Virus record (IMG/VR): IMGVR_UViG_3300028840_008160
Span: 186,001 to 250,000 of that record
Direction: 5' to 3' (one strand)
DNA length: 64,000 nt
Below, in pieces: positions 1,703 through 60,216 of the stretch. Under the pieces are notes generated by a model. The model was given only the letters and a program-made list of their open reading frames with translations, was not told where the DNA came from and made no database searches. Each line of letters begins with the position of its first letter. The stretch's first letter is position 1. A program made the translations under genes and the position numbers.

Positions 1703-1732
1703 AAAGCTGGCGCTTATGCGCCAGCTTTTTTT
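1703..1732 (+). terminator. intrinsic terminator
   Basis: aaagctggcgc-ttat-gcgccagcttt hairpin followed by a T-tract. Confidence 0.9.
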
Positions 1733-1734
1733 CT

Positions 1735-1760
1735 GTAAAGTTGACGATAAAAAATGTATA
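1735..1760 (+). promoter_or_regulatory. putative phage promoter GTAAA-N16-GTATA
   Basis: second copy of the spaced motif, directly after the terminator and upstream of the base-modification genes. Confidence 0.45.
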
Positions 1761-1788: not shown

Positions 1789-1950
1789 ATGAAAATTAAA
1801 TGTTCACATTGCGGGTTAGAAAAAGAAAAGAAACGAACAGTCGTCAGAGCTGTCGATTCGCATAACAATTTAGTTGAATATTTTTGTAATGAATGCAAAA
1901 ATGTTACTGTCAAACTTGAAAATATAGAGGATGGGGCGTATGAAAAATGA
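1789..1950 (+). CDS. small zinc-ribbon protein (53 aa; not in ORF track)
   Basis: MKIKCSHCG...YFCNECKN, two CxxC pairs; GGAAGGA RBS upstream. Confidence 0.65.
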   Translation: MKIKCSHCGLEKEKKRTVVRAVDSHNNLVEYFCNECKNVTVKLENIEDGAYEK

Positions 1951-2659
1951 AGATGTTGTAGTTCAAAATGTGTTTGTTCCGTTTGTAAAAAAGATTAACA
2001 ATGGTGAATTTGTAATTGATAAGACAGGCGTAAAAACTGTTGAGATATTAGGATTACGTATGGAATTAGATCCTAATCAGAAAATGTTAGATTTTTTTGG
2101 CATTCGTAAAACTCCACAACAATATGTTGAGCAAGAAATAGCATGGTATGATAGTCAGGATTTATCTGTTAAAGATATTGGTCAACATGCAAAAATTTGG
2201 TTGAATGTTTGTTCTAAAGACGATAAACAATTAGTTAATAGTAATTATGGTTATTTAGTCTATAGCGAAGCTAATGGTAACCAATTTGTGAATGTGAAAA
2301 ATGAATTACAAAAAAATCCATTTTCAAGACGTGCTTTAATGATTTACAATCGACCGTCAATGCATGTAGATTACTGTATTAATGGAATGTCTGATTTTGT
2401 CTGTACATTAGGTCAACAATTTTTTATTCGTGACAACAAATTAATTTCTATCGTTGAAATGAGAAGTTCAGACATGATGTATGGTTTCTTTTCTGATTTT
2501 CCGTGGTTTGCTACAGTTCAAGAAAGACTATTAACGTCACTGAAAGAGACAAACAATGAACTTGACATGGGTCAATTGATTTGGATATCAAATAGCGGTC
2601 ATCTTTATGAACGACATTTTGATATGGTTCAAAATATAGTTGCTGCTGCAAAGTCATAA
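1940..2659 (+). CDS. thymidylate synthase-fold protein, probable dCMP hydroxymethylase (T4 gp42-like)
   Basis: NSNYG, SRRA, catalytic DFVCT, RSSDMMYGFFSDFPWF (Asp at the position that selects cytosine in gp42; Asn in true ThyA), HLYERHF. Confidence 0.82.
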   Translation: MKNEDVVVQNVFVPFVKKINNGEFVIDKTGVKTVEILGLRMELDPNQKMLDFFGIRKTPQQYVEQEIAWYDSQDLSVKDIGQHAKIWLNVCSKDDKQLVNSNYGYLVYSEANGNQFVNVKNELQKNPFSRRALMIYNRPSMHVDYCINGMSDFVCTLGQQFFIRDNKLISIVEMRSSDMMYGFFSDFPWFATVQERLLTSLKETNNELDMGQLIWISNSGHLYERHFDMVQNIVAAAKS

Positions 2660-2674
2660 ATCAAGGGAATTAAA

Positions 2675-3793
2675 ATGAAAATTGGTTATTCTGCATGGGG
2701 ATTTGTCGGCGACGGCGTGCTAGATTCACCAGATGGTGGTCGATTAACTCGATCTTTAATGTTATCTCATCTTATTAAGCGAGGTCATACTGTTGTATGG
2801 TTACAACAAAACCGTGACATTGATGCAGACGGACAGCCTTTATTTATAAGCGGTCGATTATACAAAGACGAACAAAAACAACTGTTATGTTCTATTGAAT
2901 ATGCAAGCGAAGGATTTCCTGAATTAGACGTATTGTTTCTCGAATGGCGGTGGAAATTACCTGGTCGCAATTGTAACGTTGATACAACCAGTAAAGCATA
3001 TACACCAGATTTAGATCGACAAAGCCAGTTATTGAATTGTTATTTAAAAACTGGAACAAAAGTTTTGATTTGGGATAAAGACGAAACATTAAGTAGAGAC
3101 GATGAAAAAGAACTTATGGAATTAAGTAATAATGGCGGCAAGAATATTTCAATTATGTCGCCGGCATTATTTCCAGAATCTCATTTATTTGGTCGATATT
3201 CTCTTTTGTTTCCTTGTGATTTACAGAAGATAAAAGGAACAAAAGTAAATAAAGATGCTAGATATTTGATTGGTTATGTCGGTTCGCAGTATGAACGCGA
3301 TTATCAAGTATATAAGTATATCAATCCGTTTGCATTTAAATATCCACAGCAAGTCATTTTTGCTGGCAATTGGACAAAATATCTAGAAAAAGCGGAAAGA
3401 AATCATAGTAATTTTCCTTGCATAACATTTGTTGATCGTATTTTACCAAAAGATATGTGGAAAGTTTATCGCGAATGTATGACATCAGTTTTATTATGTA
3501 AGAGTAATTATGCAATACATGGACATATTACACAGCGAATTCATGAAGTAGCTGCGAATGGTGTAATTGGAATTGGACTGGCTGAACAAAAAGGAATTGA
3601 ACAATTTGTAGTTGACAATAATAGGATACAAGATGCTTATGATTTGATTCATTGTATTGAATATCTTCAGTCATTAGATATTGACAAGCGTCAAGCAATT
3701 TTAGATGAACAGATAGATAGATTAGAACCATTTGATATAAACAATGTAATGCGAAAATTGGAAGATATATTTGCCACAGAAGGCATTAAATAA
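2675..3793 (+). CDS. GT-B glycosyltransferase, probable DNA base glycosyltransferase
   Basis: N-terminal MKIGYSAWGF..G..DSPDGGR, YVGSQYER, GHITQRIHEV motifs; directly after the hydroxymethylase gene. Confidence 0.65.
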   Translation: MKIGYSAWGFVGDGVLDSPDGGRLTRSLMLSHLIKRGHTVVWLQQNRDIDADGQPLFISGRLYKDEQKQLLCSIEYASEGFPELDVLFLEWRWKLPGRNCNVDTTSKAYTPDLDRQSQLLNCYLKTGTKVLIWDKDETLSRDDEKELMELSNNGGKNISIMSPALFPESHLFGRYSLLFPCDLQKIKGTKVNKDARYLIGYVGSQYERDYQVYKYINPFAFKYPQQVIFAGNWTKYLEKAERNHSNFPCITFVDRILPKDMWKVYRECMTSVLLCKSNYAIHGHITQRIHEVAANGVIGIGLAEQKGIEQFVVDNNRIQDAYDLIHCIEYLQSLDIDKRQAILDEQIDRLEPFDINNVMRKLEDIFATEGIK

Positions 3794-4498
3794 ATGTTTA
3801 TAGGTGTTACTGAGCGCGGTGATCCGGCTCATGATTTTTCATGGACTGAATGGGTTTACGATAATAAGCCTGCGATTTTAATTACAAAAAATCCAGTAAA
3901 AATATGTGAAGTGTTAAGCAAAATGAGCGTACGTAATGTTATAGTGCACGCTAATATTACAGGTTTTGGTGGGTCAATCATCGAGCCAAATGTATTAAAA
4001 CCAGACGAAGCCATACTTGGTTATTGGGAGTTGATCAAATTGCTTGGTACTGATAGAGTTGTTTTAAGAGTAGATCCAGTTGTGCCGACTGTTAATGGTG
4101 TAATTACAGCAAAAGCTATTCTGCATATGACTAGAAGTACCAGAACTAGAATATCGTTTATAGATTTGTATGACCACGTAAAAGAACGATTTAAACTTCA
4201 TTCAATTGATATTCAGTCTGAAAATTCTGAATCATATTTGCCATGGAATGATTTTCATGCACCGTTATCACTTAGAAAGAAAGTATGGGAAGAACTTGGA
4301 AAACCTGAAGTTTGTGGTGAACCAGGGTTTGAATGTTTAGGATGTGTTTCTAAAATTGATTGTAAAATTTTAGGTGTAGATCCCATAGATGGAAATAAAG
4401 GACAAAGACCATATTGTGCATGCGTAGCTAATAAGAAAGAATTATTAATAAAACGAGGTCAATGTCCACATGGATGTCTTTATTGCTACTGGAAATGA
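3794..4498 (+). CDS. DUF1848-like Fe-S / radical-SAM-related protein
   Basis: ITKNP, ITGFG..IEPNV, LRVDPV, QRPYCAC, C-terminal CPHGCLYCY. Confidence 0.7.
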   Translation: MFIGVTERGDPAHDFSWTEWVYDNKPAILITKNPVKICEVLSKMSVRNVIVHANITGFGGSIIEPNVLKPDEAILGYWELIKLLGTDRVVLRVDPVVPTVNGVITAKAILHMTRSTRTRISFIDLYDHVKERFKLHSIDIQSENSESYLPWNDFHAPLSLRKKVWEELGKPEVCGEPGFECLGCVSKIDCKILGVDPIDGNKGQRPYCACVANKKELLIKRGQCPHGCLYCYWK

Positions 4499-4501
4499 AA
4501 A

Positions 4502-6412
4502 ATGATCGATAAAGAAGAATTAAGACAAAGATTATATAATACAGGTGAGAAGAAAGATTTTGTGCATTTGCATTTGCATAGTGATTTTTCTTTGAAAGAT
4601 GGCATCGGGAAACCAAATCAATATGCTAAAAAAGCAATTGCGCTTGGCATGCCGGCTTTGGCAATAACTGATCATGGTAGTATTGGTGCACATCCATCAT
4701 TTTTTATGTTTTGTAAGTCAAATGGTATTAAACCTATAGTTGGTGTTGAAGCATATTTGCAAGATCGACGTTATGAATATAAAGATGTTGAAGAGCAATT
4801 AAGTGATATTGATAAAAAAATTAAGTTGTTGAAACAAGCATTAAAGCATAAGAAATTAAATAAGCAGTTTGTGAACAAATATATTGAATATTATCGAAAA
4901 ATGTTGGATATGTCAGACGCTGAATTTGAAGATATTGATGCTTTAGATTTCAGTGAAGTAAAAGAATGTGTAAACAATACGTTACTTAAATTTCAACAGA
5001 TACAAAAAGATGTAGTTAATGAACGTGATAGTCTTAGAAAGAATCAGCATATTGTTTTATTGGCAAAAAATGAGCAAGGTCGTAAAAATATTACAAAAAT
5101 AGTTAGTGATGCTGCAAGGAATGGATTTTATTATAAGCCTAGAACATCATTTGATTTTGTTGCAGAAAATCATCACGGCATAATAGCAATGTCAGCTTGT
5201 CTTGGTGGCATTATTAATAATGTAATGTTACAATATGACAATGAAGCTGAAGCTGAAGCTGCAGGATTAGAAGTAGCAAAACAATACAAAGACGTTTTTG
5301 GCGATGATTTTTTTATTGAAATTATGATAATTGATATCGATCGTCAGAGACAAGCAAATACATTATTAGTCAAAATTGCTAAAAAACTTGGTATTAAGTT
5401 AGTCATTACAAATGATGTTCATTATTTAGATAAAGACGGAGCCCGGGCACAAGAAATATCTCTTATGCTTGGTTCAAAAGACGAAGTTGGACAGCAAGTT
5501 ACAATGCGAGATAAAAAGAGACAAGCAGCTATTAAAGAAATATTAGAAACTATTGGTAATGACAATTCTGCTGCTCACATTAAAAGAGTATACAACGATT
5601 ATATTGAATTAGACAGATTTGCTGAATTTAAACCGACAAAACAAAAGAATAAGTTATCAATCACATTGGACGAAATATCTGACATTGTTAGTGGTAAAGT
5701 TAAATTTAAACGTATATGGGAATTTTCTACAAAAGATTTTTGGTTTAAAGATCGACATGAGATGGTTGATGTTTATATAGATCAAGGGCATTACGAATAT
5801 TTAGATTCTGAAATTTTTGTTGAAGCATTAAATAACACGATTAAAGTAGCAAATATGATTGATGAATGGGAATGGGATACAAAAGAGAAATTGCCAAAAA
5901 TTGAGTTAGAAGAAGGTAAAAGCAGCTATGATTATATGGTCGAAATGGTTCGTGATGGGTGGCAACGAAAAGCTGAAGATAGTTGGTATGAAGAAAATAA
6001 TGTTTATGCGAAGCGCGTCAAATATGAATTGAGCGTAATACGACGAATTGATTTAGCAGACTATTTTGTTATTGTAGCAGATTACATTAAATTTGCAAAA
6101 AATCATAACATACTTGTTGGCGCAGGAAGAGGATGTTTTTTGCCTGAAGTTAATAAAGTAAAAATGGCTAATGGAACGCAGAAACAAATTGAACAAGTCA
6201 ACAGAGGTGATAAAGTTGCAAATAAGTTTTGGGGTGAGGCTAAAGTTGAAGAACATTTTGTATATGACATTGATGAAGATGTTGTAGAATTAACTTTTGA
6301 AAATAAAGTTATTATTTGTACTATGGATCATAGATTTTTTACTAGAAATAGAGGCGAAGTAAAGGCAATTGATTTAACAGAAGAAGATGAGATTTTATAT
6401 GAACTGGACTAA
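4502..6412 (+). CDS. dnaE: DNA polymerase III alpha, N-terminal piece (PHP domain) fused to an N-intein
   Basis: [50 protein letters not shown]; GAGRG is followed by intein block A (CFLPE) at 6134. Confidence 0.93.
6134..6409 (+). mobile_element. intein N-terminal fragment (92 aa) of a split intein
   Basis: starts with Cys after GAGRG; block [10 protein letters not shown]; ends [11 protein letters not shown] just before the stop. Confidence 0.85.
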
Positions 6413-7658
6413 ATTTAGAATTACCAGATATAAAAAGAAATTTCCCAATATTCCTGAAAATTTGCTAAATATATTAGTTGAATCTGCTGATAGATTTTTA
6501 ACAATTGATGAAGCACAATTATTTAAAAATCAAAACATTCAATCAAAACGAAAAATTAAATCTAATTGTGACATTTGTAAAGAGGATTTCACTATAGGTT
6601 TAACAAAATGGCTTAAACGAAAACATTCTGTTAGTATATGTCGAAAATGTTATGTTCCAAAGTTTGTTACAAAACAAAAAGACTGGTTAGACTCTCAATC
6701 TCGATGTCAAATTATAGCTCAAAATCGACAAGAGGTTAAAGTAAAAATGAGTGAATCTATTAAGAAAATGTGGAAAGAAAATCCTGAGAAATTAGAACAA
6801 ATGAGACAAAAAATAATTGAAAAAATCGATTCATCTTCTAACTATAGAGACGCAATATTAGGTTCTGATAATAAAGGCTTTATTCATTGTAGATTTGGAA
6901 AAATTAGATTTGATTCTTTGGCAGAATTAATGTTTATTATACAATGTGATAAGGACAATAAAATCGTAAGTTTAACAAGGTGGAATAAGCCTGGAATAAT
7001 TTATGAAGGGCAGACAAAAACAAAAAGATATTACCCTGATTTTGTAGTTGATGAAAAATTAATTGTAGATATAAAAAGCGGATTTGTTCAAAGTAAAGAT
7101 GAAAATTTAAACAATAAAATTCTAGCAACTAAAAATAATTATCCATTATTTGATGTTCAAATTATTAGTCCATCTATTTTGACAACATATAAATTTAGAA
7201 ATTTGATCAAATTGAATTATAATATTGAATTTTCGCATAAGTATAAACAGATTTTATATGAAAATGGTACTAAATTAGCCTCATCTTTTCAAAAAAAAAT
7301 CAGTGAAAAATCTGAATTTACTACATTAAAAAGTAAAAGAATAATACATTATAAAGGTCAAGTTCATGATCTTAAAGTGTCAACTCCAGATAGATCTTAT
7401 ATTGTGAATAACATAGTTGTTCATAATTCCGCTGCAGGCAGCCTTGTATGTTATCTTTTAGATATAACAAATGTCGATCCGATACAGCACGGGTTGTTGT
7501 TTGAGAGATTTTTGAGTATGTCTAGAAGTATGGCAATATATGATTTGTCAATTGATGACTTGTCAAGTGATGATGTTGAAGATGTAATAATTAATACAGA
7601 TAGTAAACAGTTTCATAATTGGTATGAGAATGAACGATTAATTAGGTTAGAAGAATGA
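6399..7658 (+). CDS. dnaE: putative homing endonuclease (PD-(D/E)xK type) + C-intein + short DnaE C-extein
   Basis: CDIC/CRKC zinc motif, NUMOD3-like [28 protein letters not shown] nuclease motif, VHDLKV...IVVHN intein end at 7427, then [29 protein letters not shown] (DnaE). Confidence 0.85.
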
Positions 7659-10636
7659 CAAAATTAGATTATATTCAGTTTCTTTGCGAAGAACGGTTGA
7701 CTAAACTTGGTTTACAAGATGACAAACGGTACATCCAACGGTTAGAACGAGAATTGACAAACATTGAAGTTCAAAATATACAAAATTATGTTTTGACTGC
7801 AGCTACAAAAGGCAAACACATAGACAGTCATGGTTCATTAGTTTATTTTTTACTTGGCATATCAAATAGTGATCCTATTCAAACAAACGAACCGCTTGTA
7901 ATAAAAAAGCAATCATCATTTCCTGATATTGATAGTGATTTTAGTATTAATGAAAGAGAACAAGTTGTCAAATATTTTATTGACAAATATGGTAGCGACC
8001 ATGTGGCGCCAATTGGTTCTTATGGTCAAATGAAAATGAAAATGGTTACACGAGATATTGCTCGAATTTTTGACATTGATTTAGATGACACAAATGAAGT
8101 TGTAAGAAATTTGCGAGATGATGTTGATGCTATGACAGAAGAAGAATTTGATGTCGCTATTGCAATAGAACCTGGTGAAGAAGGTTTTAGACAAGATTTA
8201 TACGATTTACGATTGTATTTTGATAGACATCCACAAGTTCGCGAAATCATATTTATGCTTAAGGGACAGCTTCGTCATTTAACAAAACATCCGGCTGGTG
8301 TTGTAGCTGTGCCGACAAAGATTGACGAAACAATACCATTAATGAGGCATAAAGACACATTGATTACTAGTTGGGTTGATGGTATTACAAGAAAAGATTT
8401 ACAATCATCAGGTTTTATTAAATTTGATATACTTGGTTTGAAAACTTTAACTATTATCAAAGAAATTTTAGAATTAATTCGATCAAGAGGCAAGTACAAT
8501 GCTAATGCTGATTTTGATTTGCAATCAATTGACAACGGACAGATGACATCTCAATTTTATGAAGACTTTTCAATACGATTACCACTTGATGGGAATAATG
8601 AAATATATGAACGATTTAGAAAAGCAGATACTAATGGTATATTTCAATTTGAATGTGTACACGGTGATACGTGGATCGGCAATTATAGAATGCGAGAACT
8701 ATATAATAAATTCGAAATAGATCCAGAATCAGTACATAAAATAGGTTGTTATAACTTTCAGAAAAAAACTAAAGTACGACAACAAATAGACGCGATGCAG
8801 AAAAAGCAAAAACGGTTATTTAGATTAGTTATTGAAGGTGACAGATGTATAGTTATTAGTTTCACGCATAGATTTTATACAAAGAATGGTTGGACGACGT
8901 TAGGTAGATTGACTACTAATGATAAAGTATTAATTGATCATGCAAGGTGTCGAACGCAATATTATTGCGATCAATCTGATACTATTGTTGATGGTTGGGG
9001 GACAGGGCCAAAATGTGCTCAGTGTATAAAAGAAAAACGACGTGTTTGTCCTTCGCAAGTTTTAGGAAAGTTTAAACGTCATTTTAAACATAGATATTCT
9101 TTTGTAAAAGTCAAATCAATAACTGATATTGGCATTCATGATGCATATGATATTGGATTTGATGTTAATAAGTTAAGACATAATTATGTTGCTAATGGAT
9201 TTATCGTTCATAATAGTGCTTTGATGAAATCATTGTTGAAAGAGATTAAGCCAACTGCATTTGCTGACATTACTTCTGCTACAGCATTAGGTCGCCCCGG
9301 TCCGCTTGATATGGGCATGCATCATGAGTATGCTGCTAGGAAAAATGGGAAACAATTTGATTTTGGTTCACCTCACATTGAAGCATGTTTAAAAGAAAGT
9401 TTTGGTATTCTAGTATATCAAGAAGATGTGATGAGATTGTGTCACATGGTTGCTGGGTTTCCATTAGATTTGACAGACACTGTTAGAAAAAATCTAATGA
9501 AGTCAATTCGCGATACTGATGCTAAAGATAAGGCTGCTAAGCAACGAAAAGAAATCACAGACATGTTTATTAAAGGCTGTATGGATAAAGGCCTTAGTCA
9601 AAAAGTTGCTGAATCTTGGTGGCAAAATTGTTGTTCTTTTGCACGTTATGGATTTAATAAATCTCATGCGGTAGCATATACAATTTTAAGTTATCAAATG
9701 ATGTGGTTTAAAGTTTATTATCCATTGGAGTTCTATGTAGTGTTATTTTCAAATTCACCAAAAGAAAAATTTACAAATTATTTTTCTGAGACTATGAATA
9801 AAGGCATAAGCATCGTTCCTGTCGACATTAGGTTAGCTAATGAAGGATTTTCAATACATGGTGAAGATAGCATTATGTTTGGATTAAGTCATATCATGGG
9901 CGTTGGACCGTCTGTTGTTAAGATAATATTAGATGCACAACCGTTTAATTCATTCGATGAATTTTGGGCTAGAACTGCTAGTGTTAAAAAGGTTGGGAAA
10001 GCAGCAATGTTGGCGCTAATTAACGCACATGCGTTTGACGCATTTGGGCCACAAAATGAAATATTAGAACGATATTTTCTTCATTTTAGACATGAGAAAA
10101 AATGGTCTAGAGATGTTGATTATGACAATAAACAATTTGAGCATGAGAAATTTATTGAAGCATATAGTCTTGATTGGCGTACGAAATTATCAGAAGCTCA
10201 AAAAGCAATATTGAAAAGTTTGAATGCGAAATTGTTAACAAGATTAGTAAATCCAACTGTTAATATGCGGCGCAATGTATGGGGTGTTGTAACAGATATT
10301 ACATTAAAAACTAGTAAAAATGGTAATCGTTATTATTATGTGTTTTTGACCGATTCAAGATTTAATATTGTGAAAATACGTATACCGTGTTACAATAGAC
10401 GATGTAAAAAAGCGTTTATGTTGAATCAGTCAACTGGAAAATACACAAAAGTTAATATTGATGATGTAATAAAGTTGAGCAACATATTAACTGGTCAAGC
10501 AGAAACAAGCGAGTATATGGGCCGAATATTTATTGATTTATACGATGTTTGTTGTATTGGTAATATATATGAAAAGTCAGTCCAACAAAAAGAACGATTA
10601 GCAAAATACGAGAAAGTTTTAAGTGAAGAACAATAA
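7655..10636 (+). CDS. dnaE: DNA polymerase III alpha, catalytic piece, containing a mini-intein
   Basis: [66 protein letters not shown]-terminal OB fold. Confidence 0.95.
8654..9214 (+). mobile_element. cis mini-intein (187 aa) at the DnaE FQFE/S site, with a Cys-rich insert and no LAGLIDADG domain
   Basis: FQFE|CVHGDT ... THRFYT ... [17 protein letters not shown]|SALMK. Confidence 0.9.
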
Positions 10637-19872: not shown

Positions 19873-20439
19873 ATGGTACTTACAGGATTAGAAATCGTAA
19901 AGCAAATAGAAGAAGGACATATTTTTATTAGCGATTTTGATCGCAAGCGACTCAATCCAAACTCGTATAATCTACGATTGCATGATGAATTGAAAGTTTA
20001 TCATTTTGATGCAATTATAGCAGAAGATCGTGTTGAAAATCAAGGTCATGGTATACTTGATATGAAGTCGCAGAATCCAACTCGTACTATAAAAATTCCT
20101 GAAACTGGATTTGTCTTGTGGCCTAACGAATTATATCTTGGTCGAACAGTAGAAATGACACGAACAAATGGATTTGTTCCACAAATTGAAGGTCGAAGTT
20201 CTATTGCTAGATTAGGCATTGATATTCATAAAACAGCAGGTTGGGGCGATGATGGGTTTGAAAATTATTGGACATTAGAAATTGTGGCGACACATCCTGT
20301 ACGCGTATATCCGTTTGTTGAATTTTGTCAGATTATTTATATGAAGACATTTGGTGATGCGTCAATGAAGTATAAAGGCAAGTATCAAAAAACGGAAATG
20401 ATTGATGGATCAAAATTATACGAAGAATTTCAAAAGTGA
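19873..20439 (+). CDS. dcd: dCTP deaminase
   Basis: LNPNSYNLRL, EGRSSIARLG, AGWGDDGF, TLEI, YKGKYQ. Confidence 0.93.
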   Translation: MVLTGLEIVKQIEEGHIFISDFDRKRLNPNSYNLRLHDELKVYHFDAIIAEDRVENQGHGILDMKSQNPTRTIKIPETGFVLWPNELYLGRTVEMTRTNGFVPQIEGRSSIARLGIDIHKTAGWGDDGFENYWTLEIVATHPVRVYPFVEFCQIIYMKTFGDASMKYKGKYQKTEMIDGSKLYEEFQK

Positions 20440-52151: not shown

Positions 52152-52769
52152 ATGACTGAAAAAGTACGACTGTATTTTTACAGAGAAAATGATGTACTTA
52201 AGAAATACACTTATTGTTCTTTATGTGGTGCAGGACCTTTTACTGAATCTGAAAAACATCGAGGCGAAATTAAACATTTGGCTGGGGATAGAGGGTCTGA
52301 GATTAACTATTGCAGACAATGCATGTTTAATCAAGGTTTATTAGTTGATATAAAAGACGAAAAAATAATTGAACAACAGATGCTTAAGACTGTTTCAAAT
52401 GAAGATGTTAGTATAAAAACTACAGTCAAACAAGAGATTAAACAACAAACATCAGTACCACAAAATGGATCATTATTTGTTTATATGATGGAAGGGGCAG
52501 ATGGAATTCTATTTTGTCATTTTGGTCGTGATATAGAAGAACATATTAAAGATGTTAATAAAGGAACTGTTAAACATGCCGGTATTAGATTGACTTCTTA
52601 TCCATTTGTATTAGTTTATAAACGTGCAGTGAATGATGAGATTGAAGCAACATCATTCGTTAAAATTATTAGAACATTACCAAAAGCATTTAAGGTAGCG
52701 TTGATTGATAATTATAAGAAATCGATTATGCAATCAATTAAAATGAAGGAGGATGAAAATGAATATTAG
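52152..52769 (+). CDS. hypothetical protein (zinc finger plus degenerate GIY-YIG-like domain, tentative)
   Basis: CSLC...CRQC; FVYMME..DG.L+...P..LVY...A....K.I+.L....K..LI. Confidence 0.45.
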   Translation: MTEKVRLYFYRENDVLKKYTYCSLCGAGPFTESEKHRGEIKHLAGDRGSEINYCRQCMFNQGLLVDIKDEKIIEQQMLKTVSNEDVSIKTTVKQEIKQQTSVPQNGSLFVYMMEGADGILFCHFGRDIEEHIKDVNKGTVKHAGIRLTSYPFVLVYKRAVNDEIEATSFVKIIRTLPKAFKVALIDNYKKSIMQSIKMKEDENEY

Positions 52770-53499
52770 TGGGCTTAACATCAAATCATCTGATGGATCA
52801 CATAATCGACCTGTAAAAGAAATAGTGAAATTGCCAAAAGATTTAATGATTGTCATATGTCTTCCTGGATCAAATTTTTCTGCTACATTTCTTAAATGTA
52901 TACTTAATACAGTAGTTTGGTTTATGGAAAACGGAATTAAATTTGTAATTTCGCAACATGAATCAAGTGTTGTATACTTTGTTCGAAATTTATGTCTTGG
53001 CGCTCATGTTTGTCGCGGGATTCATCAAAAACCGTTTAATGGCGAATTTAAATACTCGCATATTTTATGGATTGATTCAGACTCTGTTTGGGACCCACAG
53101 CAACATATTTTACCTTTAATATTACGAGATGTTGATGTTGTTGGTGGCGTATACCCGCTAGCTAATAGACAATCATATGCTGTCGTTACAAATTGGGACA
53201 AGTCGCATTATAAGAAACATGGCATTTTCCCGTTTCTTACAATAAAAGATATTGAAAGAAAAACTGATCTGATAGAAGCATACTATATTGGATTTGGTTT
53301 AACGTTAATGAAATATGGAGTGATGGAATCTCTTGAATATCCATGGTTTAAACAGATTGAAACGCCGATATCAAAAGAAATATGTGATATGGCAGGTGAA
53401 GATGTTAGTTGCTGTTTACGTTTGCGAGAAAAAGGATTCAAAATATGGGCGGATCCAACAGTTCGTGTTGGACACGAGAAACGTCAAATATTAGTCTAG
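52753..53499 (+). CDS. GT-A (family 2-like) glycosyltransferase
   Basis: HILWIDSD DxD motif, VVGGVY, GFGLTLMK, GEDVSCC.R....GF.IW.DP...VGH.K. Confidence 0.8.
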   Translation: MKMNISGLNIKSSDGSHNRPVKEIVKLPKDLMIVICLPGSNFSATFLKCILNTVVWFMENGIKFVISQHESSVVYFVRNLCLGAHVCRGIHQKPFNGEFKYSHILWIDSDSVWDPQQHILPLILRDVDVVGGVYPLANRQSYAVVTNWDKSHYKKHGIFPFLTIKDIERKTDLIEAYYIGFGLTLMKYGVMESLEYPWFKQIETPISKEICDMAGEDVSCCLRLREKGFKIWADPTVRVGHEKRQILV

Positions 53500-57306: not shown

Positions 57307-57505
57307 TATTAAAGTGACTAGTGATCCTGATGACGACAGCGTTTTGCATGTTTCATTTACACTAAGACCAAATTATTCCATTAAAGGAAAAATGGGATTT
57401 CTTACTAAGAATGGTTCATTTATGTCTATGGACATGTTGCGAAAGTCTATTGAAAAAACTAAAAGTGCGGATCAAATTTTTTCAATTGGGACGAAATTAG
57501 AATGA
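57278..57505 (+). CDS. hypothetical protein
   Basis: 75-aa ORF. Confidence 0.5.
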   Translation: MRKKMNQNSDIKVTSDPDDDSVLHVSFTLRPNYSIKGKMGFLTKNGSFMSMDMLRKSIEKTKSADQIFSIGTKLE

Positions 57506-57645
57506 TTTTAGTTACTGGTGTGGCAGGTTTTATTGGCTATCATGTGGCTAAGGAATTACTAGAGCAGAGTAGAGAGCTAGTACTCTCGTACGCGGGCCCA
57601 GATTGCAGACTGTCTACGCTTGCAAACTTTCAGCCTAGGCCCTAA
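57502..57645 (+). pseudogene. N-terminal fragment of an NAD-dependent epimerase/dehydratase, truncated
   Basis: MILVTGVAGFIGYHVAKELLE is the TGxxGFIG Rossmann start; ATGA-coupled to the upstream gene; similarity stops where the GC-rich island begins and a stop follows after 47 codons. Confidence 0.8.
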
Positions 57646-57843: not shown

Positions 57844-58557
57844 TTAGAACGCTGATGCCGGTTTGATATCTAAGTATCTTTCAAGATGTATTGGTTCATT
57901 AAGATTTTCTACATGCACATCTGCGTAAACAGTAAACTCACCCCATACTACTAAATCTAGTTTAAAATTTTCGTCTTTGTTTGTCATCTCTCTGACTGGT
58001 GGTTTGAACGTTTCATGTAAATGATATACGACTTTAGTGATTTTGCTGTATGTATCTTGGTCGTGAGCTAATGTTTCTATTCGAATTCTAAAATGTCTGC
58101 GGCGGTTTACTATACGTTCAAACGCTGAATAATGTGTCAAGTATATTAGTTTTGAATAACGTTCTATAAGTTCTTGCGTCAACTGTTTTTGGGATGCCTG
58201 TGGTAGTATTGATTGATTTGTTTTTTCTACAATTGTTGGTTTACCAATTACGATTTTTGGTGGGCTTTTAGGATTTGATTTGACAGGTGCATCTGTGACT
58301 TCTAATTGTTGTTCTATTTCTTTAACTTCGTCTTTGATTTTTGTAATAGTTGTGTCTTTAGCATCTAGATTTGGAATTTCACCAAGTTCAAAATATTGAC
58401 CGATTTTAACGTTACTACCCATTAGAATTCTTTGTTTTAATGCATCAAGAACATCTTTTGACAACAATATCAGAATTACGATAAATATTGGCCAAATAAG
58501 TTTGCTAATTAAAGGAAGTATCAATTCCCACGTTTTTGTTTTTTCAGTCGGTAACAT
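57844..58557 (-). CDS. membrane-anchored prokaryotic YEATS (pYEATS) domain protein
   Basis: N-terminal LIWP hydrophobic helix; I.KV.YHLH.TF..P.R....F.L...WGEF...A.V...LERYL. Confidence 0.75.
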   Translation of the reverse strand: MLPTEKTKTWELILPLISKLIWPIFIVILILLSKDVLDALKQRILMGSNVKIGQYFELGEIPNLDAKDTTITKIKDEVKEIEQQLEVTDAPVKSNPKSPPKIVIGKPTIVEKTNQSILPQASQKQLTQELIERYSKLIYLTHYSAFERIVNRRRHFRIRIETLAHDQDTYSKITKVVYHLHETFKPPVREMTNKDENFKLDLVVWGEFTVYADVHVENLNEPIHLERYLDIKPASAF

Positions 58558-58744
58558 TAATAGCCTTCTTTTTTAATAACGATTTATGATATGCTAATAA
58601 TGATTTGCGTGTTGATTTGATGTGCTTCCGCCAATTGCAACTTGATCGCAAACAAACTTTTGCTAATCCTTTAGTTTGACCGTTGTAGCATAGTATTGAT
58701 TTGTGCAATCCAAGACGACATAATAAATTTTTCATTACGACCAC
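58544..58744 (-). CDS. small hypothetical protein
   Basis: LLCRLGLH...C...C motif. Confidence 0.5.
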   Translation of the reverse strand: MVVMKNLLCRLGLHKSILCYNGQTKGLAKVCLRSSCNWRKHIKSTRKSLLAYHKSLLKKKAINVTD

Positions 58745-60135
58745 CTAACAATAATTTCTTGTTTTGCTAATTGCATATCATTTGCGTGCATATAAATTTC
58801 ATAAGGTGGATAACCAGTCCATGGAGTAGTTATACCATTTGCTTCTACAGTGACATTGGACAATGTCGGCGGTATATACACGTTTGTCGGTGCTGCGATT
58901 GGTAAACTGTCGTATGTCAATGTAAATTTTTTGCCGATTATGCCCCATACAGGATTTGCTCCGGATATGTTTCTTGGATATACACGAACTAATTTGTCTA
59001 TAACTGGTTTGGGATTACCGCTATCATCTAACATACCATAAGTATTATACGACGATTTATCATAACTCCAATAACACCAACCAACTTTATATTTATCTGC
59101 TAAATCACAAAAATCATTTACATAATTTAAATATCCTGGCACATCTGGTGGTGCGCCAAATTCACCGAAGACTAATGGAACGCCGTAAGATTTTGCTTCG
59201 TCAACTTTGATTTTTATAGCTTGTTCCATGATACTTCTATTATACCATTTGTATGGTCTGCCTTCATGTACTAAGGCGTCATAATAATGTGGAAAATATA
59301 TTGCTCTGTTGTTTTGTGGTGCAAATTTTAGAAAACTTGGTATTCCAGAACTTGTTGATATCCACGGTTCAAAAAACATATTAGAATATAATGAACTGTT
59401 AAGTAGTCTAGCCCACATATCTTTATAAAAATTTGTTAACACTTTACTTTCAAATGCTGTCGTTAAACCCGGAAAAGGTTCATTCATTACATCAAAACCA
59501 ACTAATGTTGGTGGTTGATTTGGCAATGAAGCTTCGATTCTATTCATTGTGTATTCGACAGCATTCAAGTATTGTGTTTTGCGCGAACTGCTTTTCCAAA
59601 AATTTGTAAATGCTGTAAGCACTGCTGGTTGTAAATAATTTCGACTCCAAGGCTCCCATGCTGGCGTAATAAAGTTAACAGTTTGATATACATCACCAAT
59701 AAAAGGAATCGTAATTTTAACTCTTTGATCAATTGACCAATCAGGAAAACCGTTTCCTGTAAAACGTTCTGCCATTAAATCTTGATGAAAGTCGACTATT
59801 GAATAAATTCCTGCATTTCTTAATAAGTTAAGATCAGTTATAACCTGATCAATGTATGCGTTATTGTAATTACCTGCTGTTGGTTCTATTTCACTCCAAA
59901 ATACTAGGTACCTGACAAGGCTAAACCCCCAGCTTCTAAGTTTTAAAATATCTAGAACTTCGGGCCACATTTCATGTCCTGGTGAATGTTTTTGATAATT
60001 TGAAATATTAACACCATGAAATATGAAGATTCTGTTATGTGAATCATAAATATAGTTAGTATCAGATATTACAGGCGGTTCATAATTTTGTTTTATATAG
60101 TTGATCATTTGAATTAAATATCTACTTATAGCCAT
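58735..60135 (-). CDS. glycoside hydrolase family 5, endoglycoceramidase-like
   Basis: R.FIFHGVNIS, VRY...WS.IEP..G.Y...Y, VDFHQD, GFPDW, GFDVMNEP (acid/base), PHYYD, VFGEFG (nucleophile), LVRVYP. Confidence 0.88.
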   Translation of the reverse strand: MAISRYLIQMINYIKQNYEPPVISDTNYIYDSHNRIFIFHGVNISNYQKHSPGHEMWPEVLDILKLRSWGFSLVRYLVFWSEIEPTAGNYNNAYIDQVITDLNLLRNAGIYSIVDFHQDLMAERFTGNGFPDWSIDQRVKITIPFIGDVYQTVNFITPAWEPWSRNYLQPAVLTAFTNFWKSSSRKTQYLNAVEYTMNRIEASLPNQPPTLVGFDVMNEPFPGLTTAFESKVLTNFYKDMWARLLNSSLYSNMFFEPWISTSSGIPSFLKFAPQNNRAIYFPHYYDALVHEGRPYKWYNRSIMEQAIKIKVDEAKSYGVPLVFGEFGAPPDVPGYLNYVNDFCDLADKYKVGWCYWSYDKSSYNTYGMLDDSGNPKPVIDKLVRVYPRNISGANPVWGIIGKKFTLTYDSLPIAAPTNVYIPPTLSNVTVEANGITTPWTGYPPYEIYMHANDMQLAKQEIIVRWS

Positions 60136-60216
60136 GTAGTCCTCCAATTTTTTTGACGTGTATAGTTACTGTGTTTATCAAAAATTGATAACACATGTAT
60201 AATTTAAGGAGGATAC

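What the first reader, a model, noticed from the sequence alone, without database searches (positions are those of the whole stretch)
1789..4498. Probable cytosine hypermodification operon: dCMP hydroxymethylase, GT-B glycosyltransferase and DUF1848-like Fe-S protein
Seen: the TS-fold protein has Asp at the base-specificity position (RSSD...SDFPW, like T4 gp42 and unlike ThyA Asn). It is followed by a GT-B enzyme that does not look like T4 alpha/beta-glucosyltransferase and by a Cys-rich protein, directly before the polymerase. A dCTP deaminase (19873), a GT-A enzyme (52753) and an epimerase remnant (57502) are elsewhere in the window. Established: T-even phages make glycosylated 5-hydroxymethylcytosine to resist restriction and CRISPR. 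Inference: a sugar-modified cytosine with possibly new chemistry, used by a DnaE-type rather than B-family polymerase.
Basis: partly seen in the sequence, partly recalled or inferred. Interest (0 to 1): 0.65.

Follow-up and report, generated by a model that had tools for sequence, protein, structure and literature searches.

The report
Phage hydroxymethylcytosine and sugar-transfer genes
A giant uncultured sediment phage carries a T4-type enzyme that makes 5-hydroxymethyl-dCMP and a distant relative of T4's DNA beta-glucosyltransferase, so it most likely sugar-coats its cytosines as T4 does; the neighbouring iron-sulfur gene is an unrelated passenger of unknown function.

Summary
All three ORFs exist as described. 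1931-2659 is a T4 gp42-type dCMP hydroxymethylase: PDB 1b49 scores E 1e-48 against about 1e-9 for ThyA. It keeps the catalytic Cys and Asp at the N177, L143 and D169 equivalents, so it is not the newly described 5-hydroxy-dCMP synthase type. The genome has its own ThyX.

Verdict: a new member of the known hydroxymethylcytosine-plus-DNA-glycosylation kind, with the sugar unknown. A "new chemistry" role for DUF1848 is not supported, though not excluded.

The parts
1703..1737 (+). Intrinsic-terminator-like hairpin plus T-run after the HU gene. It marks the likely upstream boundary of the transcription unit.
   Evidence: Stem of 11 bp with 7 GC pairs, followed by a T-run. The sequence was read directly.
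1789..1950 (+). 53-aa ORF with two CxxC pairs, Zn-ribbon-like. Its stop overlaps the start of the hydroxymethylase. Function unknown.
   Evidence: Translation. It is 44% identical to a 46-aa ORF at the same position in the relative L004. The only Pfam match is weak (DUF7479).
1931..2659 (+). dCMP hydroxymethylase (5-hydroxymethyl-dCMP synthase) of the T4 gp42 type. The true start is possibly the ATG at 1940, which follows a GAGGA.
   Evidence: PDB 1b49 scores E 1.1e-48 against about 1e-9 for ThyA. It has C158, D155 (L143 equivalent), D181 (D169 equivalent) and D189 (N177 equivalent), and in the tree it is sister to the T4-like gp42 clade. It falls far below the ThyA equivalog cut-offs. It is the only TS-fold gene in the genome, and ThyX is present elsewhere.
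2675..3793 (+). GT-B glycosyltransferase, a remote homologue of T4 DNA beta-glucosyltransferase. Predicted 5-hydroxymethylcytosine DNA glycosyltransferase; sugar unknown.
3794..4498 (+). DUF1848 protein, a radical-SAM-like partial TIM barrel with a C-terminal CX3CX2C motif and four further invariant Cys. Adjacent to the pathway genes but probably not part of the cytosine pathway.
4502..10636 (+). DnaE-type (Pol III alpha) replicative polymerase in three ORFs (4502-6412, 6387-7658, 7655-10636) interrupted by intein/Hint and endonuclease-like segments. Presumed to incorporate hm-dCTP.
   Evidence: Pfam PHP, DNA_pol3_alpha, finger, HHH_6, Intein_splicing and Hint. DnaE neighbours the GT/TS module in 41 of 58 loci.
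19873..20439 (+). dCTP-deaminase-family protein. A candidate for draining dCTP and feeding dUMP to ThyX.
   Evidence: Pfam DCD E 8.7e-34. TIGR02274 scores 91 bits against a cut-off of 92.8.
52753..53499 (+). Weakly GT-A-like ORF. No evidence links it to the operon.
   Evidence: Glyco_tranf_2_3 E 3.3e-5, below the cut-off. No useful NCBIfam match.
57502..57645 (+). 47-aa remnant of an NAD-dependent epimerase/dehydratase. Only the N-terminal Rossmann motif is present, so it is presumably inactive.
   Evidence: The translation begins MILVTGVAGFIGYHV....

Best explanation
The phage replaces cytosine in its DNA by the T4 route. This pathway is inferred.

1. dCTP is drained. The candidates are a MazG/dUTPase_2-like pyrophosphatase just upstream of the window (G000:182617-183675) and the dCTP-deaminase-like protein at 19873-20439.
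2. dCMP is converted to 5-hydroxymethyl-dCMP by the TS-fold enzyme at 1931-2659. It uses methylene-tetrahydrofolate, with water attacking the exocyclic methylene intermediate.
3. The product is phosphorylated. The candidate is a thymidylate-kinase-like protein at G000:27499-28050, followed by host NDP kinase.
4. The DnaE-type polymerase incorporates it into DNA.
5. After replication, the BGT-like GT-B enzyme at 2675-3793 transfers a sugar from a host NDP-sugar, probably a UDP-sugar, onto the 5-CH2OH group in DNA. This protects the genome from restriction enzymes and CRISPR nucleases.

dTMP is supplied separately by the phage's ThyX.

The DUF1848 gene at 3794-4498 is co-transcribed but functionally separate. 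It is most likely a radical-SAM-type Fe-S enzyme acting on DNA, either repair in the manner of spore photoproduct lyase or removal or alteration of a DNA adduct. This part is a guess with low confidence.

Shown: the family assignments, the diagnostic residues and the gene linkage. Inferred: the substrates, the sugar, the DNA-level timing and the protective role.
For: The hydroxymethylase:
- T4 dCMP hydroxymethylase matches at E 1.1e-48 over the full length, against about 1e-9 for ThyA.
- The signature residues are C158, D155 (L143D), D181 (D169 kept) and D189 (N177D). They were read against the criteria of PMC13326640.
- In the tree it sits beside the T4-like gp42 clade and far from RB69 gp48.
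- ThyX is present and there is no second TS-fold gene.

The GT as a BGT relative:
- T4 AGT is the top Foldseek hit.
- BGT is the only PDB family found by the family profile. R208, R288 and E291 align with BGT R195, R269 and E272.
- hhalign gives 96.4% to a phage b-gt.

GT-TS linkage:
- 48 of 56 IMG/VR loci have a TS gene within 10 kb, and in 34 it is immediately downstream of the GT.
- 18 of 19 GT clusters at 50% identity have a TS gene in the flank.
- Five of the eight records without a nearby TS gene were held and could be searched; 4 of those 5 have one elsewhere.
- All 49 partners have Asp at the specificity position.
- The Streptomyces homologue also sits in a cluster with a TS-family gene.

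Module partners in other phages:
- Thymidylate-kinase-like kinase in 52 loci.
- DnaE in 41 loci.
- MazG-like protein in 30 loci.
- dCMP deaminase in 13 loci.

Counterparts in the own genome:
- dUTPase_2-like domain.
- Thymidylate-kinase-like kinase.
- DCD.

Independence of DUF1848:
- 0 of 48 GT-bearing records have it, and 0 of 25 near-complete ones.
- 2 of 19 DUF1848-bearing records have any TS gene.
- 1 of 19 has this GT.
- None has a TET/JBP match above the cut-off.
Against: - There is no chemical evidence. The phage is uncultured, and only assembled contigs, not raw reads, were on offer.
- The N-terminal (acceptor) domain of the GT has no detectable sequence similarity to BGT. The equivalent of the catalytic Asp100 could not be mapped.
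- The GT4 enzymes tie with BGT in fold score.
- The dCTPase and kinase candidates are weak matches (19.5-25.8 bits; dTMP kinase E 5e-7).
- The kinase lies about 160 kb away, not next to the GT as in other phages.
- No phage-encoded NDP-sugar pathway was found, so the donor is unknown.
- The Streptomyces homologues may act on free nucleotides or bases in a natural-product pathway, so DNA is not proven as the family's acceptor.
- DUF1848 is translationally abutted to the GT and sits next to the TS gene in all three members of this clade. A clade-specific role in the pathway therefore cannot be excluded.
Confidence: 0.7

Rival explanations
1. One reading: the hydroxymethylase, the GT and DUF1848 together build a new hypermodified cytosine. 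DUF1848 would perform radical-SAM chemistry on 5hmC, on its sugar, or on the nucleotide precursor.
For: - The gene order is TS-GT-DUF1848 with abutting stop and start codons and no internal terminator.
- TS and DUF1848 overlap by 4 nt in the 416-kb relative, and the trio is kept in L004.
- Fifteen other phage loci place a non-homologous radical SAM/SPASM enzyme directly upstream of this GT family. Radical-SAM tailoring within such modules is therefore plausible.
Against: - 0 of 48 GT-bearing records carry DUF1848, and 0 of 25 near-complete ones.
- 17 of 19 DUF1848-bearing phage records have no TS-family gene, and 6 of 7 near-complete ones.
- None of those records has a TET/JBP match above the cut-off.
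- Elsewhere DUF1848 sits beside UDG, Macro, Macro-NADAR and SLOG genes or unrelated genes.
- In bacteria it is associated with RT-methylase defence genes (PMC9226505).
Confidence: 0.12
2. The TS-fold enzyme makes a different C5 product, either 5-hydroxy-dCMP as RB69 gp48 does or 5-methyl-dCMP. The GT would then attach sugar through a direct ether linkage, or not at all.
For: - TS homologues with Asp at N177 were long mis-annotated as hydroxymethylases; RB69 and DLP3 in fact make 5hodCMP (PMC13326640).
- The closest cultured homologues are Straboviridae, among which both product types occur.
Against: - The diagnostic D169N change of 5hodCMP synthases is absent: P0001 keeps Asp181.
- The L143 equivalent is Asp, as in T4, which argues against a methyl product.
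- P0001 groups with the T4-like gp42 clade, not with RB69 gp48.
- All 51 TS sequences from GT-linked loci and relatives keep Asp at the D169 equivalent.
Confidence: 0.06
3. The phage makes plain 5hmC DNA. The GT acts on another acceptor, such as a free nucleotide or base as in a nucleoside-antibiotic-like pathway, a protein, or a host envelope polymer.
For: - Streptomyces homologues lie in clusters with carbamoyltransferase, methyltransferase, kinases and sugar-nucleotide genes. These look like small-molecule biosynthesis.
- The Pfam match is to the CgeB-like Glyco_trans_1_2 family.
- The acceptor domain has no sequence similarity to BGT.
Against: - The specific remote homology and the top-ranked fold similarity are to the two T4 DNA glucosyltransferases.
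- In phages the gene is embedded between nucleotide kinase, TS, DnaE and primase genes in dozens of lineages.
- Phage GT-B enzymes of BGT-like fold were shown to glycosylate 5hmC in DNA (bioRxiv 10.1101/2023.12.21.572611).
Confidence: 0.1

Closest known systems
T4 gp42 dCMP hydroxymethylase (PDB 1b49/1b5e)
   Same: - Full-length similarity: phmmer E 1e-48 to the PDB chain, and 44-51% identity to Straboviridae homologues.
- It shares the catalytic Cys and has Asp at the ThyA N177 and L143 equivalents.
- Asp is kept at the D169 equivalent.
   Different: - It is encoded by a roughly 330-kb sediment phage that replicates with a DnaE-type polymerase, not a family-B one.
- It forms its own clade with two metagenomic relatives.
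T4 DNA beta-glucosyltransferase (BGT, PDB 1bgt/1qkj; CAZy GT63 from memory)
   Same: - The C-terminal donor domain is detectably homologous: profile E 3.9e-10, the only PDB family found.
- Counterparts of BGT Y186, G188, R195, R269 and E272 are invariant in the family.
- The gene is linked to a dCMP hydroxymethylase.
   Different: - About 14% identity, with no pairwise BLAST or phmmer hit.
- The N-terminal acceptor domain is not alignable by sequence.
- The sugar, the anomeric outcome and the acceptor are all untested.
- The family is absent from 50,697 GenBank phage records at tblastn E 1e-3.
ThyS-associated GT-B DNA glycosyltransferase pathways mined from metaviromes (bioRxiv 10.1101/2023.12.21.572611), and the kinase-GT-TS clusters of RB69, DLP3 and RL38JI (PMC13326640)
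   Same: - The same module logic: a TS homologue, a GT-B and a thymidylate-kinase-like kinase, with MazG-type dCTPase and dCMP deaminase partners.
   Different: - RB69 and DLP3 use D169N 5hodCMP synthases and arabinose; here the TS is the hm-type.
- Whether this exact GT family was among the published HMM hits could not be checked.
Spore photoproduct lyase and the radical SAM superfamily (for DUF1848)
   Same: - A CX3CX2C motif and a G-G-x4-E-P stretch.
   Different: - The Cys motif lies at the extreme C-terminus rather than after strand 1.
- There is no Pfam Radical_SAM or PDB sequence hit.
- Four extra invariant Cys are present.

Membership tests
T4 gp42-type dCMP hydroxymethylase (TS superfamily) | Full-length TS-fold homology, closer to dCMP hydroxymethylase than to ThyA | tested here: met
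   1b49 scores E 1.1e-48 against 5.7e-9 for the best ThyA. ThyA equivalog models score 58 bits against cut-offs of 108-405.
T4 gp42-type dCMP hydroxymethylase (TS superfamily) | Catalytic Cys (ThyA C146 / T4 C148) and Asp at the ThyA N177 / T4 D179 position (cytosine specificity) | tested here: met
   C158 and D189 in the alignments. The criterion comes from PMC13326640.
T4 gp42-type dCMP hydroxymethylase (TS superfamily) | Acidic residue at the ThyA L143 equivalent (water access, giving a hydroxymethyl rather than a methyl product) | tested here: met
   D155, within the segment SDFVC.
T4 gp42-type dCMP hydroxymethylase (TS superfamily) | Enzymatic formation of 5hmdCMP from dCMP and methylene-THF | not testable with these tools
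   This needs expression and LC-MS.
5-hydroxy-dCMP synthase (RB69 gp48 / DLP3 gp80 type) | Asn replacing Asp at the ThyA D169 equivalent | tested here: not met
   P0001 has D181 (MRSSD), whereas RB69 gp48 has N (MRSQN).
T4 DNA beta-glucosyltransferase family | GT-B two-Rossmann fold superposable on BGT | tested here: met
   [not shown]
T4 DNA beta-glucosyltransferase family | Detectable sequence homology to BGT | tested here: met
   The C-terminal domain only. The profile against the PDB gives E 3.9e-10, with BGT the sole family found. hhalign gives 96.4%.
T4 DNA beta-glucosyltransferase family | UDP-binding residues (BGT R195, R269, E272; roles recalled from the BGT structure papers) | tested here: met
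   They align with R208, R288 and E291, which are invariant across 48 family members. BGT R191 falls in an insertion and has no counterpart.
T4 DNA beta-glucosyltransferase family | Catalytic base Asp100 in the acceptor domain, and base-flipping of 5hmC in duplex DNA | tested here: inconclusive
   The N-terminal domain is not aligned by sequence. Invariant acidic residues exist (D20, D48, E90, D112, D134), but no residue-level structural mapping was available.
T4 DNA beta-glucosyltransferase family | Transfer of glucose from UDP-glucose to 5hmC in DNA | not testable with these tools
   This needs an enzyme assay.
Radical SAM superfamily (for DUF1848) | CX3CX2C motif binding a [4Fe-4S] cluster | tested here: met
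   C224-x3-C228-x2-C231 is invariant in 52 sequences, but it lies at the C-terminus and not after strand 1.
Radical SAM superfamily (for DUF1848) | Partial or full TIM-barrel core like that of known members | tested here: inconclusive
   [not shown]
Radical SAM superfamily (for DUF1848) | Match to the Pfam Radical_SAM model or to any solved member by sequence | tested here: not met
   Only PF08902 matches. No PDB sequence or profile hit was found.

The most novel reading that the evidence does not exclude
DUF1848 is a circularly permuted radical-SAM enzyme that acts on DNA in many large phages. In this clade it has been recruited next to the hydroxymethylase to alter 5hmC or its glycoside, which would give a cytosine derivative not yet described. 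A weaker form of the same reading: it is the first phage-borne enzyme, resembling spore photoproduct lyase, for DNA repair or adduct removal.
Probability: 0.15. Interest if true: 0.7.

Novelty: new member of a known kind. Interest (0 to 1): 0.42.

Why it matters
- It extends the T4 strategy (pre-replicative 5hmC followed by DNA glycosylation) to huge uncultured sediment phages that replicate with DnaE-type polymerases.
- It defines a BGT-related glycosyltransferase family almost perfectly linked to hydroxymethylase-type TS genes. No member was found in any GenBank phage record.
- That family offers ready candidates for new DNA-glycosylating enzymes, useful for 5hmC labelling and for understanding resistance to restriction and CRISPR.
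- The residue test (D169 kept or Asn) gives a cheap way to separate hm-type from 5-hydroxy-type pathways in metagenomes.
- DUF1848 is flagged as a widespread phage Fe-S enzyme whose function is still open.

Tried and rejected
- GenBank phages searched by tblastn with the GT, two divergent family members and DUF1848: no hits. No cultured phage can therefore anchor the chemistry.
- PDB sequence and profile searches with DUF1848: nothing. Foldseek against the PDB gave only weak TIM-barrel matches.
- BFVD gave one hit, a domain inside a 1278-aa crAss-like phage protein. The ESM Atlas returned only unnamed DUF1848 clusters, mostly viral.
- Conserved neighbours of DUF1848 across 41 loci: nothing general. 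Macro/SLOG genes occur in several loci and UDG in two.
- A TET/JBP route in DUF1848-bearing phages: none found.
- A phage-encoded NDP-sugar pathway: the cytidylyltransferase-like protein upstream is a MazG-NadD (NMN adenylyltransferase) fusion, not a sugar activator. The epimerase is a 47-aa remnant.
- Sequencing runs: only Logan contigs from sediment and seawater metagenomes hold the region. No raw or nanopore reads were on offer, so no modification signal could be sought and read laying was not used.
- Literature on DUF1848: only two listed papers mention it, with no functional study.
Full report
**Setting.** The window is positions 186001-250000 of a 329.8-kb IMG/VR virus record with about 33% GC, estimated 67% complete. 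The same sequence occurs in sediment and seawater metagenome assemblies. The finding lies in a replication and nucleotide-metabolism module. In order, that module holds:
- a 5'-3' exonuclease (217-1131);
- an HU-like protein (1315-1677);
- a strong terminator-like hairpin (1703-1728);
- a 53-aa Zn-ribbon-like ORF (1789-1950);
- the TS-fold gene (1931-2659);
- the GT (2675-3793);
- DUF1848 (3794-4498);
- a DnaE-type polymerase in three ORFs with intein/Hint and endonuclease-like insertions (4502-10636).

Further downstream are RecA, RuvC, NrdD/NrdG, Mre11/Rad50-like proteins, a dCTP-deaminase-like protein, a ligase and a sigma factor.

**The TS-fold protein is a T4-type dCMP hydroxymethylase.**
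- It matches T4 dCMP hydroxymethylase over its whole length at E 1.1e-48. The best thymidylate synthases reach only about 1e-9.
- NCBI's ThyA equivalog models score it far below their cut-offs.
- A 2026 paper (PMC13326640) shows that Asp at the ThyA N177 position indicates only dCMP as substrate. An acidic residue at L143 goes with a non-methyl product. Homologues that make 5-hydroxy-dCMP (RB69 gp48, DLP3 gp80 and nine others tested) carry Asn instead of Asp at the D169 equivalent.
- In an alignment with a T4-like gp42 and RB69 gp48, the window's protein has D155 (L143 equivalent), C158, D181 (D169 kept) and D189 (N177 equivalent).
- It groups with two metagenomic relatives as sister to the T4-like gp42 clade. 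RB69 gp48 is distant and is the only sequence with Asn.
- The genome has ThyX at G000:313678-314232 and no second TS-fold gene, so this enzyme is not needed for dTMP.
- By every sequence criterion available it is a 5-hydroxymethyl-dCMP synthase.

**The GT is a remote relative of T4 beta-glucosyltransferase.**
- Plain searches find nothing in the PDB or in 50,697 GenBank phage records. Pfam gives only a sub-threshold Glyco_trans_1_2 match.
- The word-index search found 111 homologues. These are metagenomic proteins at 50-74% identity and a 30-38% group that includes Streptomyces 'glycosyltransferase family' proteins.
- An AF2 model built on 48 of them is confident (pLDDT 94.7).
- Foldseek's top hit is T4 alpha-glucosyltransferase bound to DNA.
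- A profile of the family searched against all PDB sequences returns one significant family only, T4 BGT, at E 3.9e-10 over the C-terminal donor domain.
- hhalign against a phage b-gt gene gives 96.4% probability.
- In that alignment the family's invariant Y201, G203, R208, R288 and E291 fall on BGT Y186, G188, R195, R269 and E272. I recall the last three as UDP contacts; this rests on memory of the BGT structure papers.
- The N-terminal acceptor domain is not alignable by sequence, and I could not map BGT's catalytic Asp100.

**Comparative genomics ties the GT to the hydroxymethylase.**
- A scan of IMG/VR found 56 loci encoding relatives of the GT at 24-61% identity.
- In 48 of them a TS-family gene lies within 10 kb. 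In 34 it starts within 150 nt downstream of the GT.
- After dereplication at 50% identity, 18 of 19 GT clusters have the TS gene in the flank.
- Of the eight loci without a nearby TS gene, five records were held and could be searched. Four of those five have a TS gene elsewhere, and the fifth is a fragment estimated 12% complete.
- All 49 full-length TS partners scored have Asp at the cytosine-specificity position. All TS partners in the later alignment keep Asp at the D169 equivalent.
- A Streptomyces homologue lies two genes from a TS-family gene, separated from it by a carbamoyltransferase gene, in what looks like a nucleoside-type biosynthetic cluster.
- The phage modules recurrently contain the following partners:
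  - a thymidylate-kinase-like kinase just upstream of the GT (52 of 58 loci);
  - DnaE (41 loci);
  - a DnaG-like primase (38 loci);
  - a MazG-like protein (30 loci);
  - a second, GT47-like GT (20 loci);
  - a radical SAM/SPASM enzyme (15 loci);
  - dCMP deaminase (13 loci);
  - an RGP-family protein, the family of UDP-arabinose mutases (13 loci).
- This is the module logic already published for RB69, DLP3 and RL38JI, and for GT-B pathways associated with ThyS in metaviromes.

**The rest of the T4-like route in this genome.**
- Just upstream of the window, a 352-aa ORF (G000:182617-183675) ends in a dUTPase_2/MazG-like all-alpha pyrophosphatase domain.
- That domain is homologous to small stand-alone genes at the same place in the two relatives. 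In the 416-kb relative the stand-alone gene lies directly beside the GT.
- Here the domain is fused to Zn-ribbon repeats and an endonuclease-like domain. It is the best dCTPase candidate, though the match is weak.
- A thymidylate-kinase-like protein at G000:27499-28050 is distantly similar to the kinase of the other modules.
- The dCTP-deaminase-like protein at 19873-20439 could also lower dCTP and feed ThyX.
- No NDP-sugar genes were found near the operon. The cytidylyltransferase-like protein upstream is a MazG-NadD fusion. The epimerase at 57502 is a 47-aa stump, and the GT-A-like ORF at 52753 is a weak, unlinked match.
- The sugar donor is therefore presumably a host UDP-sugar, as in T4. 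Its identity is unknown.

**DUF1848.**
- The protein matches PF08902. It has at least 428 homologues of similar length, mostly from large viral contigs.
- Fifty-two of them share seven invariant Cys: a C-terminal C224-x3-C228-x2-C231 plus C174, C184, C208 and C210. They also share a TERGD motif at the N-terminus and a G-G-x4-E-P stretch.
- The AF2 model is confident (pLDDT 92).

**Is DUF1848 part of the pathway?**
- In favour:
  - Its start abuts the GT stop.
  - In the 416-kb relative it overlaps the TS gene by 4 nt, and the trio is kept in a 105-kb relative.
- Against:
  - Among 19 other DUF1848-bearing viral records, only two have any TS-family gene (one of seven near-complete ones). Only the 416-kb relative has this GT, and none has a TET/JBP match above the cut-off.
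  - Conversely, none of 48 GT-bearing records has DUF1848, including 25 that are at least 90% complete.
- Elsewhere DUF1848 sits next to UDG in two lineages. It also sits near Macro, Macro-NADAR and YpsA/SLOG genes or near unrelated genes.
- In bacteria it accompanies UG25 reverse-transcriptase-methylase fusions.
- The two systems are therefore statistically independent. The adjacency here is best explained by both being early genes of the replication module.
- My best guess for DUF1848 is a DNA-directed radical enzyme for repair or adduct reversal. That guess has low confidence.

**Verdict.**
- The system is a new, uncultured member of the known kind 'pre-replicative 5hmC plus post-replicative DNA glycosylation'.
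- Two points are of moderate interest:
  - a BGT-related GT family that is tightly linked to hm-type TS genes and unknown among cultured phages;
  - its habitual pairing with DnaE-type polymerases.
- Nothing chemical has been shown. The decisive experiments are heterologous expression with nucleoside LC-MS and GT assays on 5hmC DNA.

Noticed in passing
window 4502-10636: The DnaE-type polymerase is encoded in three consecutive ORFs (636, 423 and 993 aa). A Hint fragment sits at the end of the first, intein-splicing and endonuclease-like (DUF7487/PD-(D/E)XK) segments in the second, and another intein in the third. This could be split or degenerate inteins, or frameshifts. The relative L004 has two ORFs (618 and 1260 aa).
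   Followed up: partly
G000:182617-183675 (2.3-3.4 kb upstream of the window start; L115:6617-7675): The MazG/dUTPase_2-like putative dCTPase is fused to an N-terminal region with repeated CxxC Zn-ribbon motifs and a phage endonuclease I/DUF7487-like domain. In relatives it is a stand-alone gene of 116-154 aa.
   Followed up: partly
G000:177892-178914 (L115:1892-2914): A fusion of a MazG pyrophosphohydrolase domain with a NadD-type nicotinate/nicotinamide mononucleotide adenylyltransferase (TIGR00482, above its cut-off). This is a phage NAD-salvage gene, not a sugar activator.
   Followed up: partly
window 57844-58557 (-) and 58735-60147 (-): A protein with a prokaryotic YEATS domain (pYEATS E 1e-18) lies next to a GH5 cellulase-family glycoside hydrolase. 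Both are on the minus strand in an otherwise plus-strand genome.
   Followed up: no
L066:9127-10017, L083:8024-8887 and 13 further loci: In 15 phage loci a canonical radical SAM/SPASM enzyme lies immediately upstream of this GT family. It is not homologous to DUF1848. This suggests radical tailoring of the sugar or base in those lineages.
   Followed up: partly
L050:7094-8185 and 12 further loci; L071:6012-7160 and 19 further loci: Some GT/TS modules add an RGP-family protein (the family of plant UDP-arabinose mutases, Pfam E 9e-36). Others add a second, weakly GT47-like glycosyltransferase. Both hint at arabinofuranose or multi-sugar decorations on 5hmC.
   Followed up: no
L005:2779-16338 (Streptomyces contig): A Streptomyces cluster combines a 316-aa Asp-type TS homologue, a carbamoyltransferase and the GT homologue. 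It also carries methyltransferase, APH-type kinase, histidine phosphatase, epimerase, SAH-hydrolase-like, NUDIX and CMP-sugar-synthase-like genes. It is possibly an undescribed hydroxymethyl-cytosine nucleoside pathway.
   Followed up: no
L035:9480-10756; L002:8001-9616; L014, L016, L017, L023, L096: In other phages and archaeal MAG contigs DUF1848 sits next to UDG-superfamily genes (two lineages). It also lies within a few kb of Macro, Macro-NADAR and YpsA/SLOG genes, which are linked to the reversal of DNA ADP-ribosylation.
   Followed up: partly
L033 (G002:249918-253301): The 416-kb relative has a second, more divergent TS-family gene (Pfam E 2.8e-10, 312-aa open frame) about 14 kb from the hydroxymethylase.
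   Followed up: no
L034:5908-8532: A 424-kb phage that carries DUF1848 encodes an 874-aa protein with a major-vault-protein shoulder domain (PF11978), next to R2K and HPr-like genes.
   Followed up: no
L093-L102: Phage-type DUF1848 genes turn up on contigs binned to Methanoperedens, Pacearchaeota, Nanoarchaeota and Natrialbaceae MAGs. These may be archaeal viruses or extrachromosomal elements rather than chromosomes.
   Followed up: no
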